NCBI RefSeq assembly: GCF_006345805.1
Contig: NW_021833395.1
Location: 1-27,320 of the forward strand
DNA length: 27,320 nucleotides
Direction: 5' to 3'
Source of the DNA: Octopus sinensis
Lineage: Eukaryota
The notes beneath the pieces were generated by a model. That model did no database searches and was not told the origin of the DNA. It worked only from the letters and a program-made list of their open reading frames with translations. The translations under genes and the position numbers were made by a program. Below, piece by piece: positions 3,411 through 26,249 of the stretch (position 1 is its first letter; each line of letters opens with the position of its first letter).

Positions 3411-4042
3411 CTACTTATATATATACGACAGGCTTCTGTCAGTTTCCGTCTGCCAAATCCAATCAGCCCGAAGCTATAGCAGAAGACACTTACCCAAGGT
3501 GCCACGCAGTGGAACTGAACTCGGAACCATGTAGTTGGGGAGCAAGCTTCTTACCACACAGCCACGTCTGTATTAATTATTTTTCTTTGTATCTTGTATG
3601 TGTTGTGTGTATTGCATTTGTTAGACTTTGCTTCATGTTTATATAAACAAAACTGTTTGATATATATAACTATAGTTTCCGTTATTATATATCCTTTTCC
3701 CACCACTATTACTTCTGCTGTTACCACCAGCACCAGCACCACCACTACTACCGCTACTACCATCATCACAACGCCTGCCAACTTCACCACTACATAAGCC
3801 ATTACCACCTGTATAACTTATCACAATTACCACCATTCGTGCCGTACCTACCACCACCAACAACAACCACCACCGATCAACACTTCTGTTTCTACCATTG
3901 TTATATATTCAATTATATTTTCATCTCCGCCATTTTTACTTCTACCTCAGAAACTTTTAAATCGTGTGGTGTCGTTGCCATTATTGCAACCACCAACAAC
4001 ACCAACATAACTGGACATACATAACAGCAACAATAACAGTGT

Positions 4043-4612
4043 GGAGACGCAAAAGCCCAGGAGTTAGGGCAGCGGACTCGCAGTCGTAAGAACGCGGTTT
4101 CGATTCCCAGACCAGGCATTGAGAGTTTTTATTGAGCAAAAACACCTGAGCTCCACGAGGCTCCGGCTAGGATGGTGGGTGGTGAACCCCGTTGTACTCT
4201 TTCACCACAACTTTCTCTCACTCTTTCTTCCTACTTCTGCCACAATGCAGAGGAACCATGGTGTAACCCACTATGGTGTGGTAAACTTTCAGACCCTAGT
4301 CTAGATACCCCAGGATGGTTCATCTCTCCACCCGTTAAAAGCCACCGATTACGGAATGAGGATAACAACGTAGCTTTCGCGCCCCTGCAACCGCCATGTC
4401 TATCGCGGGTGGTGGGTGGATCTTCAAGTTGCCACACGCATTCTTAATAGCTTAGAGTAGGCACGAATTAGAGATTATTCTTTGTGGCTAATGGCGCGAG
4501 TCCTGATTTGGAAGAAGAAGAAGAAGAAGAAGAAGAAGAAGAAGAAGAAGAAGAAGAAGAAGAAGAAGAAGAAGAAGAAGAAGAAGAAGAAGAAGAAGAA
4601 GAAGAAGAAGAA
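4043..4612 (+). mobile_element. SINE-B head (4043-~4240) joined to a different ~270-bp body ending in (GAA)34
   Basis: The first ~200 bp align to SINE-B at 17331 and then diverge after CTTCCT..TTCTG. A pure GAA run occupies 4511-4612. Confidence 0.7.
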
Positions 4613-5189
4613 GAGTGGCAACGATATTATTAACATGGACACGATCAGCATCGCCTCTACCACCACCACCACCACCACCACTACAAGCATCACTAGCACG
4701 AACTGACGATAAAACCTTTGTGTGGTTGCTCGATATAGGCGGAAATGCAGCTAAACATTACTCAAAACACAGTTTAAAAAAGAAAAAGCCATGCCGGATA
4801 ATATAGATTCTGATAAAAAATTATCCAACGATGCATTGCGATACACAACTCAGTGTGCTGCGAGAATAATAAAATTATATTTTAATAAAGGAGAAACATA
4901 TAAATCAGAATTTATGATACCTATACCTTAACGCAATAAAAGCAGACGCCTACGCTTTGTGTCACAATCTAGAAATTTATTCGAAATTGCACTCGGAATG
5001 CAAATCGATGTATTAAATACCAAAAGATGTTTAACAGACATTTGAATGAATCTGCCACATCACAGACTTAAATTATGAATTATATATCAATACAAAAGTA
5101 CTTTCATTTCTACCTACCTCTTGTACCATCGTCTAGAAAATGTTATTTGAAAGCGGTAACTTCTTTTACTAATGAAAATGTCTATATCT

Positions 5190-5598
5190 ATATTCAAGTC
5201 CATGCATCCATCTATCCTATTCTGTACCTTTGATGTGTCGTGGGTAAGAGTCCTCAGTTACTTCTCCATAGGGTACTATCAGAACCAACTGTCATTAAAT
5301 TTTGGGGGCTGGATTCCGAAGTGCGAACAACTGAAACTGCGGATATTATCGAACGATCCCATTCTCTCGGCCTACCCCTAGGTCTCTTCTTGGTTGACTT
5401 CGTATCAAGAATTCGTCCTTGTGGTTCTTCCCTTTGACATTCCAATCGCATGTCAGTAGTACTAGAGCTGTGACCACTCACTGCAGAAAGGTAGCGACTC
5501 GACCTGAAGAGACTCTCTGATCTCCGAGCTACACACCTTGTCGAATAACGTTACTCCAGAGACCCTTCGGAGGAATCCCACTCGTCCGCTTATATTTG
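5190..5598 (-). mobile_element. RTE-clade (Rex3/Expander-like) LINE remnant, 3' part
   Basis: Broken frames read GFLRRVSGVTLFDKVCSSEIRESLQVE and KKRPRGRPREW...LWRSN, followed by a GATAGATGGATG-type tail typical of Rex3/Expander 3' ends. Confidence 0.85.
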
Positions 5599-5827
5599 TT
5601 TTTTTATTACCCACAAGGGGCTAAACATAGAGGGGACAAACAAGGACAGACAAACGGATTAAGTCGATTACATCGACCCCAGTGCGTAACTGGTACTTAA
5701 TTAATCGACCCCGAAAGGATGAAAGGCAAAGTCGACATCGGTGGAATTTGAACTCAGAACGTAACGGCAGACGAAATACGGCTACGCATTTCGCCCGGCG
5801 TGCTAACGATTCTGCCAGCTCGCCGCC
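5599..5827 (-). mobile_element. Full-length SINE-A, 3' module of a 5S-SINE chimera
   Basis: Complete head, core and tail, ending in an A7 run that abuts the left TSD copy at 5581-5598. Confidence 0.92.
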
Positions 5828-5842
5828 TTCTCAATGTGTCAC

Positions 5843-5950
5843 GCTTACAGCACTTAGGTTTCCCAAGCGGGCACTCATCTAAGTACTAACTAGGCTCGAC
5901 TTCGGTGATCGGATGGGAACCGGTGCTTTCAACGTGATATGGCCGTAAGC
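5843..5950 (-). pseudogene. 5S rRNA: 5S rRNA retropseudogene (108 nt, ~10-nt internal deletion)
   Basis: Minus strand: GCTTACGGCCATATCACGTTGAAAGCACCGGTTCCCATCCGATCACCGAAGT^CGAGCCTAGTTAGTACTTAGATGAGTGCCCGCTTGGGAAACCTAAGTGCTGTAAGC. The helix I ends pair, the segment expected as TAAGCAACGT is missing, and there is no T-run terminator. Confidence 0.93.
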
Positions 5951-6370
5951 TCGTCCGCTTATATTTGCTATCCTACTCTTTCGATCGTTACCCAACATTC
6001 ATGATCATAAGTAAGGACAGGCTCGAAAACTGAAATGAAAATAGCACGTCTAGCTTATTTTACCAACCTCTCTCCTCTTTTGAGGACCGAATTCTGGAGC
6101 TGAGGCATTACTGTGTCAGTTCCTACAATGCTAACATCCAATTCAGCCTTTTCCTTGCCATCACTCGTGAATACGGCCCCGAGACACTTAAACTTCTCCA
6201 CATGCTCTCGTGATGTTTCACTAATATGCAGAGTATAATGAAACGAATTTCTTGAGAGAATCAATATTTCAGAATTCGCAACACAAATTCTCATCCCAGC
6301 CTTGCAGCACTCGTCAGCGAACCCTTTCAATCGATGCTCAGGGAATATGATTTTGCCCACGAACAAACTT
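5950..6370 (-). mobile_element. RTE-clade LINE remnant, post-RT (thumb) region; same copy as 5190-5598
   Basis: FADECCKAGMRICVANSEILILSR...VEKFKCLGAVFTSDG...*ARRAIFISVFEPVLTYDHECWVTIER resembles Rex3/Expander ORF2. It is collinear with the 3' part across the insertion. Confidence 0.88.
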
Positions 6371-6820: not shown

Positions 6821-6844
6821 ATGGAACGATTATAAGTAAGAAAA

Positions 6845-7075
6845 AGCGGCGAGCTGGCAGAACCTTTAGCACGCCGGGCGAAATGCGTAGTCGTATTTCG
6901 TCTGCCGCTACGTTCTGAGTTCAAATTCCGCCGAGGTCGACTTTGCCTTTCATCCTTTCGAGGTCGATAAATTAAGTACCAGTTAAGCACTGGGGTCGAC
7001 GTAATCGTCTTAATCCGTTTGTCTGTCCTTGTTTGTCCCCTCTATGTTTAGCCCCTTGTGGGTAATAAAGAAACA
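6845..7075 (+). mobile_element. Full-length SINE-A (tail type 1) with a ~15-bp TSD
   Basis: Consensus-like copy flanked by TATAAGTAAGAAAAA (6831-6845) and TATAAGTAAAGAAAA (7076-7090). Confidence 0.92.
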
Positions 7076-9289: not shown

Positions 9290-9862
9290 ATTAAGTCTAG
9301 GGAGGCTCTAATCGATTACATCATGCCCAGTGTTCAACTGGTATTTATTTCAATGACCCCGAAAGGTGGAAAGATAAAGCCGGCCTCAGCGGAATTTGAA
9401 CTCAGAAGTTAATGACGAATGAAATGTCGCTAAGAATTTTGCCCGGCGTGCTAACGTTTCTTATTTCTTTATTGCCCACAAGGAGCTTAACATAGAGGGG
9501 ACAAACAAGGGCAGACAAAGGGATTAAGTAGATTACATCGACCCCTCTGCGTAACTGGTTCTTATTCAATCGACCCCGAAAGGATGAAAGGCAAAGTCGA
9601 CCTCGGCGGAATTTGAACTCAGAACGTAACGGCAGACGAAATACCTATTTCTTTACTACCCAGGGGCTAAACACAGAGAGGACAAACAAGGACAGACAAA
9701 TGGATTAGTCGATTATATCGATCCCAGGCGTAACGTACTTATTTAATCACCCCGAAAGGATGAAAGGCAAAGTCGACCTCGGCGCAATTTGAACTCAGAA
9801 CGTAGCGGCAGACGAAATACCACTAAGCGTTTCGCCCAGTGTGCTAACGTTTGTGCCGGCTT
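9290..9862 (-). mobile_element. Nested or tandem trimer of SINE-A copies (9290-9461, 9462-9645, 9646-9862)
   Basis: Three box-B/core blocks in series. The junctions are tail GAAATA|GGTATTTCG and tail GAAATA|AGAAACGTTAG. Confidence 0.9.
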
Positions 9863-9873
9863 CTTTTTCGTCC

Positions 9874-10040
9874 GAGCTGGCAGAATCGTTAGCACGCCGG
9901 GCGAAATGCTTAGAGGCATTTCATCCGTCTTCACGTTCCGAATTCAAATTCCGCCGTGGTCGACTTTTCCTTTCATCCTTTCAGGGTCATTAAATTAAGT
10001 ACCAAATTTGCTGACCTTGTACCAAAATTTGAAACCAATA
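9874..10040 (+). mobile_element. SINE-A tail type 2, head-to-head with the trimer
   Basis: GAGCTGGCAGAATCGTTAGCACGCCGGGCG...TGTACCAAAATTTGAAACCAATA. Confidence 0.85.
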
Positions 10041-10619: not shown

Positions 10620-10760
10620 GATTAACATATACATGTCAACATATATACTATACATATATATTATATTATATTATACTACATATATATTGTATGTATATGT
10701 ATATAAATATATATGTATATATATGCATACGTATATATGTATGTGTATATATATATATGC

Positions 10761-10797
<37 letters not shown>

Positions 10798-11079
10798 ATA
10801 TAGATATACTTGTAGACATTTGTGTATGGAAAAATATATATATATAACTATACATATATTCATACATATATACACTCATATATATATATAAAAATCATAG
10901 TATATGTATTTAGTTATTTATCAGATAAGGTTTCGTATCATTTTAATATATTTGCATTTATGTTAAAAAGTTATTCACCAAGTTACAAGTTCACTCACAC
11001 ATGCACATACACACACAGTCTCACACATATACATATATATATATATATGCACAAATACCCACATGCGGTGTACATGTGT

Positions 11080-11134
<55 letters not shown>

Positions 11135-11165
11135 GTGTGTGTGTGTGTGTTTGTGTGTTTGCGTA
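10620..11165. repeat. Compound TA/TATG/CA/TG microsatellite region
   Basis: Direct inspection. Confidence 0.9.
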
Positions 11166-11578
11166 CCTATGTATCTGTATATACGTATTATCTAAAGCGA
11201 GATATATGTGGGTCATAATTTATTCAAACCACAACTAATTTCATATTCACAATTATAGAATAAATAGCTTTATTAGACAGTTTGAAATGTCAATAGAATT
11301 TACAAGTATATAAAATTACAGTGACAAAAAAAATGTGGTTTTCAGATTTATTCATCTGCGGTTTACGTGACTTGAGATCAAATAAGTCGTCTCTTTTGTT
11401 GAATTTCCAATGAAAAGTTTTATGAAATTTTCATTTCAGATTCTGAAGAAAAAAACTGTGATTTTGAGCCGCGTCAGTTATATATAGATAAAACATACTA
11501 GAGTGTGCCGCAGCGTGTGCATAGTATAACTGAGATAACATCTTTATAGATAAGAAGAACATTGATTTTGTTTTTCAG

Positions 11579-11939: not shown

Positions 11940-11970
<31 letters not shown>

Positions 11971-12122
11971 CATATATGTACGACAGGCTTCTTTCAGTTT
12001 CCGTCTCCCAAATCCACTCACAAGGCATTGGTCGGCCCGGGGCTATAGCAGAAGACACTTGCCCAAGATGCCACGCATGTGGTTGGTTAGCAAGCTACTT
12101 ACCACACAGCCACTCCTGCGCC
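11732..12122 (-). mobile_element. Full-length SINE-C (CORE-like block, internal CA/TA microsatellite)
   Basis: Head GGCGCAGGAGTGGCTGTGTGGTAAG, CORE-like GCATCTTGGGCAAGTGTCTT, tail AAGTAAAAGAGTAAAGAGTA. Confidence 0.92.
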
Positions 12123-12853: not shown

Positions 12854-13066
12854 GGTATGCACATATATGTATTTATATGTGCATTTTTTTTCTAGTTTCA
12901 GCTCAGAGCTGCGGCCATGCTGATGAACCATATATATATATATATAAACGTGTGTGTGTGTGTGTATCTGTGTAAGATCCGGGGATCGAGGTATACGAAG
13001 AAAGTTAATCCGTAGTAAATATTGCAAAAAAAGACAACTATCAGAGACAATATCGCTTCATTAAAA

Positions 13067-13500
13067 GGCGGCGAGCTGGCAGAAACGTTAGCACGCCGGG
13101 CGAAATGCTTCGCAGTATTTCATCTGCCGTTACGTTCTGAGTTCAAATTCCACCGAGGTCGACTTTGCCTTTCATCCTTTCGGGGTCGATTAAATAAGTA
13201 CCAGTTACGCACTGGGGTCGATGTAATCGACTTAATCCGTTTGTCTGTCCTTGTTTGTCCCTTCTGTGTTTAGCCCCTTGTGGGTAATAAAGAAATAAGA
13301 ATCATTAGCATGCCGGTCGAATGCTTAGCGATATTTCGTCTGTGCTTACATTCTGAGTTCAAATTCCGCCCAGCTAGACTTTGCCTTTCATCCTTTCGGG
13401 GTCGATAAATTAATTACCAGTTGCGTACTGAGTTCAATCTAATCGACTGGCTCCCTCCCCCAAAATTTTGGGCTTTGCGCCTAGAGTAGGAAAGAATATT
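13067..13500 (+). mobile_element. Full SINE-A (13067-13297) followed by a head-clipped older SINE-A with tail type 3 (13298-~13500)
   Basis: Junction GAAATA|AGAATCATTAGCA, the same breakpoint as at 9461. Confidence 0.9.
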
Positions 13501-15654: not shown

Positions 15655-16072
15655 GTTTTACTGTTTTACTGTTTTACTTGTTTCAGTTATTTGACTGTGG
15701 CCATACTGGAGCACAGCCTTTAGTCGAGCAAATCGACCCCAGTACTTACTATTTGTAAGCCTAGTACTTATTCTATCGGTCTCTTTTGCTAACCGTTAAG
15801 TTATGGGACATAAACACACCAGCGATGCTGGGAGGACAAACACAGACACACAAACATATACACCACATACATACATACATACCATATATAATATATATAT
15901 TATATATATATATACGACGGGCTTCTTCAGTTTCCATCTACCAAATCCACTCACAAGGGTTTGGTCGGCCGAAGCTATAGAGAAGACACTTGCCCAAGGT
16001 GGCCACGCGTGGGACTGAACCCGGAACCATGTGGTTGGTAGCAACTACTTACCACACAGCCACTCCTACGCC
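15655..16072 (-). mobile_element. Full-length SINE-C
   Basis: Same head, CORE-like block and tail as 11732-12122. Confidence 0.92.
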
Positions 16073-16140
16073 TATCTATGTATGTATGTATGTATGTATG
16101 ATTGTATGTATGTGTAGATTTGTATGTGTTATGTATGTAT

Positions 16141-17195
16141 TCTCATGCATATAGTTACATGTCTAGACATGCTCTTATATATTTAAATGATAAACTTCTG
16201 GAAAGTTTTACAGATTTTTATAGTTCCAGTAATGGATTGGATCAGTAATCTTCGAATTAGCTTTCTCCTTTCTGGTTTTGAGAAGTCTAATTTCTCAAGA
16301 TTGGTAAATAGGCAGTGTGTTACATATCTCAAAGCCCCAATAATTACAGGTATAAACCTGAACTTGTAATCTGGATAGAGTAACTGCATATTTCTCAATA
16401 GTTCACCATATATGATCCCTTTTTTTACTGACCTTAAGCTGTATGTTAACATCCACTGGGCAGCTAATTTCCACAATTGTGCACAGTTTCTTTTCTGTAT
16501 CCCAAATCATTATATCAGGTCTGTTGTGCTTACATTTTAATGAGGTCTTCACTGGTACATTCCACCAGTATTCCTTTTTATTATGAGTGTCTATGGCTTC
16601 TACTATGTTGTGGGGTTTTATTTCTTTGTCCTCGGGATTATCCTTCCGGCGGACGTCATTATAGAGTGTCCTAGCTACAACATAATGTCTCATCGGTAGA
16701 TAATACCATGATGACATTTTCGGACAACTGCTTATGATGTGGGTGATATCTTCAGTGTGAACTCCACAAAGTCTGCATGGGTTGTCACATTTTACGGGTT
16801 TTCCAGCATCTCTATCCCTTTTGTGCATCAGGTACTTGGTTGATATTTCTTGTTCCTGGATTGCAAATGCATACCCTTCAAAGTGAGAGGTAGTAATCCG
16901 GCTATTGATCCTTGATATCCTAGTTTGATGATCTATGTTACTATCGTTACGGATTTTTTTACTAACATATTCATGCATAGTCTTCTGCTCATATAGGCTC
17001 ATCGTTTCATCTGATGATATGTTGCTGTAGACTTCTTTGGACATGCGAATTCTTTCGGCATGCATTCTAGATTATCAGACAAAGAGTGTTGCTCAAAGAT
17101 CTGCCTTCCACGTCTTGTGATGTTACCAGCCTCATGTATGCAAACTTGGTCCAGGGATGCACTTCGACGCTTGGTAGTTAAAAGATGTTGCCGAT
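16141..17195 (-). mobile_element. 5'-truncated R4/Dong-clade non-LTR retrotransposon (CCHC knuckle + restriction-like endonuclease)
   Basis: EGYAFAIQEQEISTKYL, CRLCGVHTEDITHIISSC, MRH, HNRPDIMIWDTEKKLCTIVEISCP...IYGEL...IPVIIGAL. One 1-nt frameshift lies in the A7 run near 16420-16426, the stop is at 16183, and the RT is absent. Confidence 0.88.
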
Positions 17196-20364: not shown

Positions 20365-20582
20365 TTCAAATTTTGGCACACGCAGGTTTTCGCAATTTTC
20401 TGTAATTTGGGAGGAGAGGTTAAGATGATTTCATCAACCCCTGTGTTCAACTGATACTTATTTCATCGACCTCGAAAGGATGATTGGCAAAGTGGGTCCC
20501 GGCAGCATTTAAACTCAAAACGTAAAGACGGATGAAATGCCGCTAAGCATTTTTCCGTTGCAATACCAATTCTGCCAGTTGT
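20365..20582 (-). mobile_element. Degenerate SINE-A, tail type 2
   Basis: Core CGACCTCGAAAGGATGA and TTTCAAATTTTGGCACA tail on the plus strand. Confidence 0.75.
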
Positions 20583-21041: not shown

Positions 21042-21750
21042 AATGAAATAAGTACCAGTTAATGAAATAAGTACCAGTTTAGCACTAAGGCCAGTATAAT
21101 CGACTTACACACTGGTCTTGTGCCAAACTTTGAAACCATTATTGAATAAATGGAAGGCAGTAAGCTGGTAGAGTCGTTAGAACAACGGATAAAATGCTTA
21201 GCGACATTTCGCCCGTTTTTACGTCCTGAGTTCAAATTCCACCTACGTCGACTGTACCTTTCACCCATTTGGGGATCGATGCTATAATTACTAGTTGAAT
21301 ATCGAGGTCGATCTAATCGACTAGCCACTCACCGCAAATTTCAATCCTTGTACTTGTAGTAAAAAGGATAATTGATTGGATGGGTTGGGATAAAAAAGCG
21401 ATGTTGACCTGCTGAAATGTGAACTCTGATAGTAAAAGGCCGGAAAAAATACCGTAAGATATTTTTCTTCTGATTCTACCAGTTCGGCGCCTTAGTGGTA
21501 TGTGTAAAACAAAAACGAAGCCAAAACCTATTATTAACTTCTACAAAGGCGGCGAGCTGGCAAACTGCATTTCGTCCGTTTTCACGTCTTCATGTTCTGA
21601 GTTCAAATTAAATTCCACCGTGGTCGACTTTGTCTTTCATCCTTTCAGGGTCGATAAAATAAGTATCAGTTGAGTGCTGGGGTCGATGCAATCAACTTAC
21701 TAGCTGCCTAGAATTGCTGACCGTGTGCCAAAATTTGAAACCATTTATTA
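21042..21750 (+). mobile_element. Cluster of three old SINE-A-family copies (about 21042-21143 3' part, 21153-21372, 21546-21750)
   Basis: Head AAGGC(A/G)G..AGCTGG, box B, core, and tails type 2 or 3. A 19-bp tandem duplication lies at 21042-21079. Confidence 0.8.
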
Positions 21751-24440: not shown

Positions 24441-24519
24441 CATCACCAGGTGGAACTGCCCGAGCACTGCTGCCTAATAATAATAATACTTATTATTATT
24501 ATTATTGTCGCTACCATTA

Positions 24520-24740
24520 AGGCGGCGATCTGGCAGAATCGTTAGCACGCTGAGCAAAATACTAAGTGGCATTTCGTCCGTCTTTAAATCCTGAGTTCAA
24601 CTTCCACCGAGGTCGACTTTGCCTTTCATCCTTCCGGGGTTGATGAAATAAGTAGCAGTTGTGCACTGGGGTCGATGTAATTTACTAGTTCCTCTTCCTC
24701 AAGAATTTCAGGCCTTGTGCCTATAGTAGAAAGGATTATT
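24520..24740 (+). mobile_element. SINE-A family, tail type 3
   Basis: AAGGCGGCGATCTGGCAGAATCG...AATTTCAGGCCTTGTGCCTATAGTAGAAAGGATTATT. Confidence 0.85.
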
Positions 24741-25594
24741 GTTGCCACCATTGTTATCTGCACCTTTCCCCCACCCTTCATCCTCTTCTCTCTTTTCTTC
24801 TTCTTGAAGGCTTCCGTCTGACTGTGTAGCAAGTTTCTTCCTTCCTTTCTTATATTTTCTATTTAATTGTGTATGTCTATGTCTGTATGTGTGAATGCCT
24901 GACTGTACATCTTCTTCCTTCTCTACCTCATTATCCACTTACTCTTCTCCTTTCCTCATCTCTCCTTTCCTCATCTCTTCTCTCCTCATCTCTCCTCTCC
25001 TCCACCGCACGCATTTCTTTTAGACAAATTTTTTTTTCTTGTTGATCACGGGTGTAGTATTTCTGCGAGACTTGTTGAAAGTTAAAGTTACCATTCCAAT
25101 TATGATGTTATTTTGCCTTCATATCAAATGAATGCCAAGCAACACTTAATTGATTAAAATTCTAAGAACTTCATAAATGTTCGTTCCTTATATATTTCCT
25201 TGTTGTTATTTTTGCTTCTTATTATATTTTCCTTTACCGTTTTTCTTTTTACAATTTCTCTCTGCCTTTTCTTATTTCTTTTCATTAAATTTTCTGTCTT
25301 TCTTGGTTTCTTCAAATATAATTCTTTTACCTTTAAACAAGATCTTTCCAGTTGATTTAAATGTAAGGTTTCCAACAAATTGAAGTCAATTTAATTAATT
25401 ACATATTACACATAATTGGTTTTGTTTGTGCCAGCTATATTAATTGTTTAAATACAATCTCTTATGACTTTTGTTTCTTTTGTATATTTTAATTTATTTT
25501 ATTTTTATCTTTTTAATTATTTCCTCGTATGTTCTATTTTTTTTTTATTGCCGTTGTTTTCCTCAGACAGAAAGATGACGGAATTTCTTTTATT

Positions 25595-25858
25595 TCCTCA
25601 TCCATCCATACGTCAGTCCATCTATTCATTCACCCATCCATCCATCCATCCATTCATCCACCCATCCATCAATCCGTCCATCCATCCACCCATCCTTACA
25701 TACGTACATACATACATACATACATACATACATACATCTGTACATCTCTATATACATACATTCATACATACATCTGTTCATCTATTCATCCATCCATACA
25801 TATATACATGCACATTTACACACATATTTATACATACGTATATACATACATATATATA
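25595..25858. repeat. Compound (CATC)n/(CATA)n microsatellite
   Basis: Direct inspection. Confidence 0.9.
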
Positions 25859-26249
25859 GTTATTCATTTAACTATATAGAAATGAAACGATTGCTTTTTA
25901 CCCCTGTTCTCTGTTCAAAGTGGGTTCTTGGAAAATAACAATGCACTTTAATTCATTTTCAATTAAATTCATTGTCATTATTATATATAAAAGCAAAGAA
26001 CATTAGTACTGTCTCTTTCTCCTCCTCCTCCTCCTCCTCCACCACCACCTCCTCCTTATCCCCCCTCAAATATTTAACGATTCTTGTTTAGCCTCAGATT
26101 CAGTCAAAATCGGTCAACTACGTTCTTCCGATTTTTCTTTCAGATATCTAGAACTAGATCTTCCGGTGTATACTTGTGTTAAAACGAAATACGGCAGGGA
26201 GATTTCACTGCTATTTCCAGCGTGTCGATTCGTTTAGCCGTCATAGAGA

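What the first reader, a model, noticed from the sequence alone, without database searches (positions are those of the whole stretch)
5581..5967. 5S rRNA-SINE chimeric retrocopy inside a single 18-bp target-site duplication
Seen: CTCGTCCGCTTATATTTG occurs at 5581-5598 and 5950-5967 and duplicates RTE coding sequence that is otherwise collinear across the insert. Between the copies, on the minus strand, lie a 5S rRNA starting at its nucleotide 1 (the G coincides with the TSD edge), a ~13-15 nt linker GTGACACATTGAG(AA) in place of the T-run terminator, and a full tRNA-headed SINE-A ending in A7. So one retrotransposition event carried both RNAs. The 5S lacks about 10 nt (expected TAAGCAACGT, the partner of ACGTTG in helix II and part of internal promoter box A). 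Established: structural-RNA/retroelement chimeras (U6-L1 type) and 5S-headed SINE3 families exist in other taxa. Inference: either a one-off template-switch or RNA-ligation chimera, or a member of a 5S+tRNA composite SINE made by Pol III read-through from a terminator-less 5S gene. I do not know of such a family in cephalopods.
Basis: partly seen in the sequence, partly recalled or inferred. Interest (0 to 1): 0.8.

Follow-up and report, generated by a model that had tools for sequence, protein, structure and literature searches.

The report
5S rRNA fused to SINE retrocopy
A near-complete copy of 5S ribosomal RNA and a complete octopus SINE were inserted into the genome together in one retrotransposition event; this shows how SINEs are thought to gain new heads, but the kind of event is already known in other animals.

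Summary
An exact 18-bp direct repeat (5581-5598, 5950-5967) brackets 351 bp. On the minus strand these read: a 5S rRNA copy (Rfam 68.8 bits, model 1-120, lacking nt 53-62), a 13-nt linker GTGACACATTGAG, and a full-length 231-nt SINE. Removing the insert and one repeat restores a decayed LINE reading frame that is collinear with a related LINE copy. There is no second duplication and no tail between the 5S and the SINE, so one retrotransposition event carried both.

- The 'AA' belongs to the SINE, since all 22 SINE heads examined start AAGG or a close variant. The linker is therefore 13 nt.
- 'A7' is the SINE's own AATAAAGAAA tail with one G>A change, not a poly(A) tail.
- tRNA models do not recognise the SINE head.
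- 5S nt 1 overlaps the last base of the repeat.
- 5S+tRNA-SINE composites are known (AmnSINE1, HaSE3).

Most likely the reverse transcriptase ran off the SINE RNA 5' end and jumped onto 5S rRNA, producing a one-off copy. A propagating composite family could not be tested, because no searchable octopus genome was available. None of 21 other SINE heads carried 5S. This is a new member of a known kind, of moderate interest.

The parts
5950..5967 (.). Target-site duplication, upstream copy in element orientation. Its last base, 5950, is also 5S nt 1.
   Evidence: Exact 18-bp repeat, 0 expected by chance. Single-copy in the related LINE L006.
5843..5950 (-). 5S rRNA retrocopy, nt 1 to the end of helix I (...GCTGTAAGC). 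It lacks nt 53-62; the deletion junction lies between 5899 and 5898. No T-run terminator follows.
   Evidence: Rfam RF00001 at 68.8 bits, model 1-120, helix II 3' strand absent. Helix I closes in the predicted fold. Junction GAAGT|CGAGCC.
5830..5842 (-). 13-nt linker GTGACACATTGAG of unknown origin. Rfam counts its first G, 5842, as 5S position 120.
   Evidence: Unique in the window and in 196 kb of fetched cephalopod and other loci at <=1 mismatch. At 2 mismatches only a chance-level match appears.
5599..5829 (-). Full-length SINE, nt 1-231 of the consensus. Box A-like motif at 5817-5807, box B-like motif at 5753-5743, tail AATAAAAAAA.
   Evidence: 97% identical to the window consensus with 7 differences, 3 of them private. 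The 5' end AAGGCGGCG is shared with 21 other heads.
5581..5598 (.). Target-site duplication, downstream copy.
5237..6366 (-). It carries stop codons and a 1-nt frameshift.
   Evidence: Blastn to L006 covers 5237-5596 and 5951-6338. The protein is 59% identical to P0001 across the site. Both stop codons inside the duplication are present in both copies.

Best explanation
This is a one-off chimeric retrocopy made in a single target-primed reverse transcription event. A LINE endonuclease nicked a dead LINE copy, and reverse transcription started on the 3' tail of a SINE RNA and ran to SINE nt 1. The enzyme then continued for 13 nt, which are either non-templated or filler nucleotides or a short 5' leader of that particular SINE transcript. 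It then jumped end-to-end onto the 3' end of a 5S rRNA molecule and copied it to nt 1. The cDNA end was joined to the upstream target with 1 nt of microhomology, leaving a 17-18-bp target-site duplication. The missing 5S nt 53-62 were skipped during cDNA synthesis or lost afterwards by slippage between two GT dinucleotides.

Shown: the anatomy, the single duplication, the collinear empty site, the completeness of both RNA copies, and the absence of an internal tail.

Inferred: that the join was a template switch, the origin of the linker and of the deletion, and that no family descends from it.
For: One exact 18-bp duplication encloses both parts. The empty site is collinear with a related LINE at both DNA and protein level. 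The 5S is copied from nt 1 to the end of helix I with neither upstream nor downstream gene spacer, which indicates an RNA origin rather than a DNA fragment. The SINE is complete from its consensus nt 1, as defined by 21 other heads, which is the geometry expected when the enzyme runs off the template end. No A-run, tail or repeat lies between the parts. The 5S part lacks most of box A (nt 53-62) and has no terminator, so this copy is a poor candidate for a 5S-driven source gene (box positions from established Xenopus 5S work). No second 5S-SINE junction was found among 21 other heads, 133 kb of O. bimaculoides or 27 SINE-derived proteins. In the literature, non-LTR reverse transcriptases add non-templated nucleotides on running off a template and jump end-to-end (PMC2718515, citing Bibillo & Eickbush 2004). 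Chimeric retrogenes form preferentially with small RNAs (PMC4758252, citing Buzdin 2003), and 5S/LINE-1 chimeras inside TSDs have been catalogued (PMC13174262).
Against: A 13-nt linker is longer than the few non-templated nucleotides usually seen at template jumps, and its origin is unexplained. A mature 5S rRNA template should be intact and end in U residues. Here 10 internal nt are missing and no T follows ...AAGC, so extra steps must be assumed. The negative evidence against a family is weak: 0 of 21 heads only bounds composite copies to below roughly 14% of SINE copies, and no whole octopus genome could be searched.
Confidence: 0.55

Rival explanations
1. This is a copy of a pre-existing genomic arrangement. 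Somewhere a 5S (pseudo)gene without a terminator lies 13 nt upstream of a SINE. Pol III starts at 5S +1 and reads through both, and the SINE tail lets the partner LINE retrotranspose the whole transcript. This copy would then be a daughter, possibly one member of a 5S+SINE composite family.
For: The 13-nt linker is simply explained as spacer DNA of a source locus. No T4 run occurs anywhere in the 352-nt composite, so Pol III would not terminate inside it. The 5S deletion would be an inherited family mark rather than an extra event. Composite 5S+tRNA-SINE families exist elsewhere, such as AmnSINE1 and HaSE3 (PMC4758252, PMC3272025).
Against: The deletion removes nt 53-62, most of internal promoter box A, so a 5S with this sequence should initiate poorly, yet the copy starts exactly at nt 1. 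Retroposed 5S copies are generally expected to be silent because type 1 promoters need upstream signals (PMC3272025, citing Kapitonov & Jurka). No second example was found among 21 other heads, 133 kb of O. bimaculoides or 27 SINE-derived proteins.
Confidence: 0.25
2. The two RNAs were joined by an RNA ligase before reverse transcription, as shown for U6/LINE-1. The ligated RNA was then retrotransposed through the SINE tail.
For: It gives the same final anatomy: sense-sense orientation and a single duplication. RNA ligation is an accepted route for U6/L1 chimeras (Moldovan 2019, cited in PMC13174262).
Against: The known route needs a 2',3'-cyclic phosphate 3' end, which is a U6 feature not known for 5S rRNA (background knowledge). 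Ligation does not explain the 13-nt linker any better.
Confidence: 0.08
3. Two sequential events occurred. The SINE inserted first and created the duplication. Later, 5S-derived DNA or cDNA was inserted or captured exactly at the SINE's 5' junction, for example during break repair.
For: The linker could be repair filler. The 5S carries an internal deletion typical of untidy repair.
Against: It needs a second break exactly between the duplication and SINE nt 1, with no loss of either and no second duplication. Both duplication copies are intact and identical, and the 5S is in the same orientation and complete at both ends.
Confidence: 0.07
4. This is an assembly or read chimera rather than a real locus.
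For: None specific.
Against: The exact target-site duplication of host LINE sequence on both sides is a biological signature that misassembly would not create.
Confidence: 0.02

Closest known systems
Bipartite chimeric retrogenes made by LINE reverse transcriptase template switching (Buzdin et al. 2003 type: U6-, U3-, 5S rRNA-, 7SL-L1/Alu/mRNA). A 2026 catalogue of 5S/LINE-1 and Alu/LINE-1 chimeras is in PMC13174262.
   Same: Two unrelated RNA copies are fused and enclosed by one target-site duplication, the 3' part carries the tail used for priming, and the 5' part is a small Pol III RNA.
   Different: Here the 3' partner is a complete SINE rather than a 5'-truncated LINE. The host is an octopod and the enzyme is not L1. 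A 13-nt linker separates the parts. In human 5S/L1 chimeras the 5S is usually antisense and truncated at nt 46 or 90 (PMC13174262), whereas here it is sense and end-to-end.
AmnSINE1 and the Deu-SINE subgroup (Nishihara et al. 2006, as described in PMC4758252)
   Same: A 5S rRNA sequence is fused to the 5' end of a tRNA-type SINE head, which is the same order of modules as here.
   Different: AmnSINE1 is an amplified family in which the 5S took over promoter function and part of the tRNA region was lost. Here a single copy is known, the SINE is intact and 5S box A is damaged.
HaSE3 of Helicoverpa armigera (PMC3272025) and CoeSINE5 of coelacanth (PMC5786205)
   Same: These have a 5S rRNA head joined to the body and tail of a SINE from the same genome, attributed to a template switch from SINE RNA to 5S rRNA.
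   Different: In HaSE3 the 5S replaces the tRNA head, and several copies exist in several species. Here the 5S is added in front of the whole SINE, and recurrence is not shown.
SINE3 (5S rRNA-derived SINEs, Kapitonov & Jurka 2003)
   Same: 5S-derived 5' module followed by a LINE-dependent 3' module.
   Different: SINE3 families have an intact 5S internal promoter and many copies. Neither is shown here.

Membership tests
5S rRNA (Rfam RF00001) | Covariance-model score above the gathering threshold over the full model | tested here: met
   68.8 bits against a gathering score of 38, model positions 1-120.
5S rRNA (functional gene) | All five helices present, intact internal control region (box A about +50-64), T-run terminator | tested here: not met
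   The helix II 3' strand and nt 53-62 are absent. No T follows ...AAGC. It is a retrocopy, not a gene.
Chimeric retrocopy (template-switch type) | Two RNA-derived parts in the same orientation inside a single target-site duplication, with no tail or duplication between them | tested here: met
Chimeric retrocopy (template-switch type) | Parts directly fused, or separated by only a few non-templated nucleotides | tested here: not met
   A 13-nt linker of unknown origin separates them.
Chimeric retrocopy (template-switch type) | Empty target site demonstrable | tested here: met
   A paralogous LINE copy, L006, is collinear across the site and has the duplicated 18 bp once. The true orthologous empty allele was not available.
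Composite 5S+SINE family (SINE3 / AmnSINE1-like) | Many interspersed copies (SINEBase criterion: at least 100) with the same junction and different flanks | not testable with these tools
   No octopus genome is searchable. Control scans for the SINE core were empty in all DNA collections tried. In the small sample, 0 of 21 other SINE heads had 5S, and there was no 5S in 133 kb.
Composite 5S+SINE family (SINE3 / AmnSINE1-like) | Intact 5S internal promoter (boxes A, IE, C) | tested here: not met
   Box A is largely deleted. The IE-like and box C-like regions are present.
tRNA-derived SINE (SINE2) | Interspersed multi-copy element with its own defined 5' end, tail and target-site duplications | tested here: met
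   At least 20 copies or fragments in the window and 33 hits in 133 kb of O. bimaculoides. Duplications are visible at 6843-7073 and 2242-2472.
tRNA-derived SINE (SINE2) | Recognisable tRNA similarity or cloverleaf in the head | tested here: inconclusive
   ARAGORN and the Rfam tRNA model give no hit. Only box A-like and box B-like motifs, 53 nt apart, are present.
RTE-clade LINE (host element) | RT and endonuclease domains placing it in the RTE clade | not tested
Only the region C-terminal to the RT domain survives. It is 59% identical to an unnamed LINE-like ORF, and Pfam finds no domain.

The most novel reading that the evidence does not exclude
The locus is a member, or the first daughter, of an octopod-specific composite SINE in which a 5S rRNA module has been placed in front of a complete tRNA-type SINE. 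That would be the early intermediate stage postulated for AmnSINE1 and HaSE3, not previously described in cephalopods, and transcribed by read-through from the 5S start.
Probability: 0.2. Interest if true: 0.55.

Novelty: new member of a known kind. Interest (0 to 1): 0.35.

Why it matters
New SINE families are thought to arise when a reverse transcriptase, after copying a retrotransposing RNA, jumps onto a small Pol III RNA that then supplies a new promoter. Families such as AmnSINE1, HaSE3 and CoeSINE5 are read as old products of that step, but the fresh intermediate is rarely seen. That intermediate is a complete small RNA in front of a complete SINE inside one duplication.

This locus is a clean, young example: the duplication is exact and the SINE part has only 3 private changes. 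It lies in an octopod genome, where SINEs are very abundant and an RTE-clade LINE has been reported as expressed in the brain and proposed to be active (PMC9115989). It also shows that the enzyme mobilising this SINE can reach the true 5' end of its template and continue onto another RNA.

It adds a taxon and a tidy specimen, not a new principle.

Tried and rejected
Searches for other copies of the junction:
- The junction-spanning ORF (66 aa) and a host LINE ORF were looked up as exact proteins in public assemblies. Neither is on record.
- A word-index protein search with the junction ORF found no candidate. That negative is unreliable, because a later exhaustive search found SINE-derived proteins sharing long identical words with the query.
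- A metagenome scan for '5S end, 0-30 nt, SINE head' gave 5 hits. All lie on contigs of 55-67% G+C and show no other similarity to the 5S or the SINE, so they are chance matches.
- The junction was absent from genome contigs and viral contigs. The SINE's invariant core is also absent there, so these negatives carry no information.

Other attempts that led nowhere:
- Literature full-text searches for the SINE and 5S sequences found nothing.
- The Buzdin 2003 and Nishihara 2006 papers are not held and are cited only through papers that describe them.
- tRNA detection in the SINE head failed.
- The linker was searched in the window and in 196 kb of fetched loci and found nowhere else.

Ideas rejected:
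- That the A7 is a poly(A) tail. It is the family tail with one substitution.
- That the host LINE is necessarily the SINE's partner. Its relative L006 ends in (GTTA)n, unlike the SINE's AAAGAAATA tail.
- That the many mir-297-type weak Rfam hits are real. They lie in microsatellite-rich stretches.

Full report
**Observation**

The 18-mer CTCGTCCGCTTATATTTG occurs exactly twice in the window, at 5581-5598 and 5950-5967. No further match appears with up to two mismatches, and none in 100 shuffles. The 351 bp between the two copies (5599-5949) have three parts on the minus strand.
- **5S rRNA.** Rfam RF00001 matches 5950->5842 at 68.8 bits (gathering score 38), E 8.8e-13, covering model positions 1-120. 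It is the only 5S match in the window, even at E<=5.
- **Linker.** GTGACACATTGAG occupies 5842->5830.
- **SINE.** A 231-nt SINE occupies 5829->5599 and is 97% identical to a consensus built from the other copies in the window.

**The 5S part**

It starts at nt 1 (GCTTACGGCC...). Its first G is also the last base of the repeat, so the duplication is 17 or 18 bp with a 1-nt ambiguity. It ends with the 3' strand of helix I (...GCTGTAAGC), and helix I closes in the predicted fold. Ten consensus positions are missing and the four helix II pairs are flagged as broken. Counting from nt 1, the gap is nt 53-62, between window 5899 and 5898 (GAAGT|CGAGCC).

By analogy with other metazoan 5S rRNAs, which is background knowledge, the lost segment is the 3' strand of helix II and most of internal promoter box A (+50-64). 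If the missing segment is TAAGCAACGT, which is inferred by analogy and not observed, a GT dinucleotide lies on each side of the gap, so slippage is possible. No T-run follows the 5S. The copy therefore has RNA-defined ends and is not a functional gene.

**The SINE part**

The family is abundant: more than 20 copies or fragments in 27 kb. Nine copies in the window keep their 5' end, and all start AAGGCGGCG or a close variant directly after unrelated flanks. The same holds for 13 heads in 133 kb of Octopus bimaculoides DNA that I could fetch (L007, L012, L013). This leads to three corrections.
The SINE here is full length and the linker is exactly 13 nt.
- The family tail is AATAAAGAAA(TA). The 'A7' here is that tail with one G>A change, not an added poly(A).
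- ARAGORN and the Rfam tRNA model do not recognise the head. Only box A-like (TGGCAGAATCG) and box B-like (GTTCAAATTCC) motifs are present, so the tRNA origin is plausible but untested.

The copy differs from the small consensus at 7 of 231 sites, 3 of them private, so it is young.

**The target**

Removing 5599-5967 gives a minus-strand reading through the C-terminal part of a decayed LINE. A conceptual translation across the site is 59% identical over 146 residues to P0001, with QIxADE-M-GFLRRVSG aligned to RIQAAEMGFLRRVSG. I supplied the M by hand; the DNA has TG where ATG is expected.

At DNA level the empty site aligns collinearly with the related LINE copy L006 apart from that single 1-nt gap. 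L006 has the duplicated 18 bp only once. Both stop codons inside the duplication are present in both copies, so the LINE was already dead when it was hit. I did not verify the RTE clade: Pfam finds no domain in what survives.

**One event or two**

Both parts lie on the same strand inside one exact duplication. Nothing between them resembles a tail, an A-run or a second duplication. Both are complete at their outer and inner ends. A second, later insertion would have had to hit exactly between the duplication and SINE nt 1 without leaving any mark. I put a single retrotransposition event at about 0.9.

**How the two RNAs were joined**

The geometry is what end-to-end template jumping predicts: a SINE copied to its very first nucleotide, then a small Pol III RNA copied from its 3' end to nt 1. 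Supporting literature:
- Non-LTR reverse transcriptases add non-templated nucleotides on running off a template and can jump to another (PMC2718515, citing Bibillo & Eickbush 2004).
- Chimeric retrogenes form preferentially with small RNAs (PMC4758252, citing Buzdin 2003).
- 5S/LINE-1 and Alu/LINE-1 chimeras inside duplications have been catalogued (PMC13174262).
- Template switching from a tRNA-SINE RNA to 5S rRNA is the published explanation for HaSE3 and for the 5S-plus-tRNA head of AmnSINE1-type Deu-SINEs (PMC3272025, PMC4758252). Kojima gives the same model for SINE birth (PMC5786205).

**The linker**

The 13-nt linker is the weak point, being longer than typical non-templated additions. 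It occurs nowhere else in the window or in 196 kb of fetched loci. It could be a 5' leader of the particular SINE transcript, with a start about 25 nt upstream of box A instead of 12. It could be a snippet from a third template. Or it could be genomic spacer from a source locus in which a terminator-less 5S lies just upstream of a SINE.

The last reading is the main rival. It also explains the deletion as inherited, and it is compatible with the absence of any T4 run in the composite. Against it, a 5S lacking most of box A should initiate poorly, yet the copy begins precisely at nt 1, and retroposed 5S copies are expected to be silent (PMC3272025).

**Family or one-off**

The decisive search could not be run.
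- Scans for the junction in the metagenome, prokaryote-genome and viral collections gave only chance matches on contigs of 55-67% G+C, or nothing. The SINE's invariant core is also absent from two of these collections, so they simply hold no octopus DNA.
- Exact look-ups of window ORFs found nothing.
- An exhaustive protein search with the junction-spanning ORF found 27 SINE-derived proteins, including O. bimaculoides XP_052828027.1 at 84% identity. In the eleven I read, the match ends at the SINE head (…SSPP) and continues into unrelated sequence, never into the linker or 5S.
- None of the 21 other SINE heads is preceded by 5S, and no 5S occurs in 133 kb of O. bimaculoides.

This only bounds composite copies to below roughly 14% of SINE copies. 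A low-copy family is not excluded.

**Organism**

The SINE family and other repeats are shared with O. bimaculoides. The window is therefore from an octopod. The species was not established.

**Verdict**

This is a real, young chimeric retrocopy of 5S rRNA, a 13-nt linker and a full SINE, made in one event. The most likely mechanism is template switching (0.55). The main rival is a copy of a pre-existing 5S-SINE source locus or family (0.25). It is a new member of a known kind and of moderate interest as a clean specimen of the step by which SINEs are thought to acquire new heads.

Noticed in passing
window 13065-13448 (+) and 9312-9644 (-): Twice, a young full or near-full SINE ending ...AATAAAGAAATA is joined directly to nt 17 (AGAA.CGTTAGC) of an older, more diverged relative that ends near nt 168. 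The junction AAAGAAATAAGAA is the same at both loci. This could be a dimeric family, insertion preference for the AGAA site in old heads, or template jumps.
   Followed up: partly
window 9312-9861 (-): Three SINE units lie head-to-tail: consensus 10-233, 51-233 and 17-166, separated by 0-1 nt. An inverted fragment follows at 9873-10004.
   Followed up: partly
window 24519-24681, 21154-21322, 20420-20552, 13298-13448, 9312-9461: There is a second, older subfamily. It shares the first ~168 nt of the SINE but has a different 3' part. Most O. bimaculoides hits are of this type.
   Followed up: partly
window 15917-16075, 11965-12082, 3416-3570: A different SINE-like repeat with a CORE-like CCTTGGG(C/T)AAGTGTCTTC motif, read on the minus strand. 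It is also present just downstream of the LINE ORF in L006 (1170-1346) and in O. bimaculoides L007 (4396-4561).
   Followed up: no
window 5580-5581 (just downstream of the TSD on the minus strand): The host LINE has TG where its relative has ATG, a 1-nt frameshift immediately next to the downstream duplication copy. This is probably ordinary decay, but its position at the duplication edge is noted.
   Followed up: partly
window 16403-17065 (-): A 220-aa ORF is 71% identical to O. bimaculoides LOC106878562. It has a weak zf-RVT match and is probably the C-terminal part of another retroelement.
   Followed up: partly
window 4512-4615; 384-2300; 10676-11240; 25460-25880: A long (GAA)n run and extensive TG/TA-rich microsatellites. 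They account for the many sub-threshold mir-297, mir-1277 and mir-3149 Rfam hits and for the long artefactual ORFs.
   Followed up: no
L008 2943-3056 (ENA ERZ25067903 contig): A potassium-channel RNA editing signal (RF00485, 72 bits) lies inside an Ion_trans gene, so this 'metagenome' contig looks like animal DNA, possibly cephalopod. It lacks the SINE studied here.
   Followed up: no
The word-index protein search reported no candidate for a query that shares long identical words with an NCBI O. bimaculoides protein found later by the exhaustive search. Negatives from the word index should be treated with caution for such short repeat-derived ORFs.
   Followed up: no
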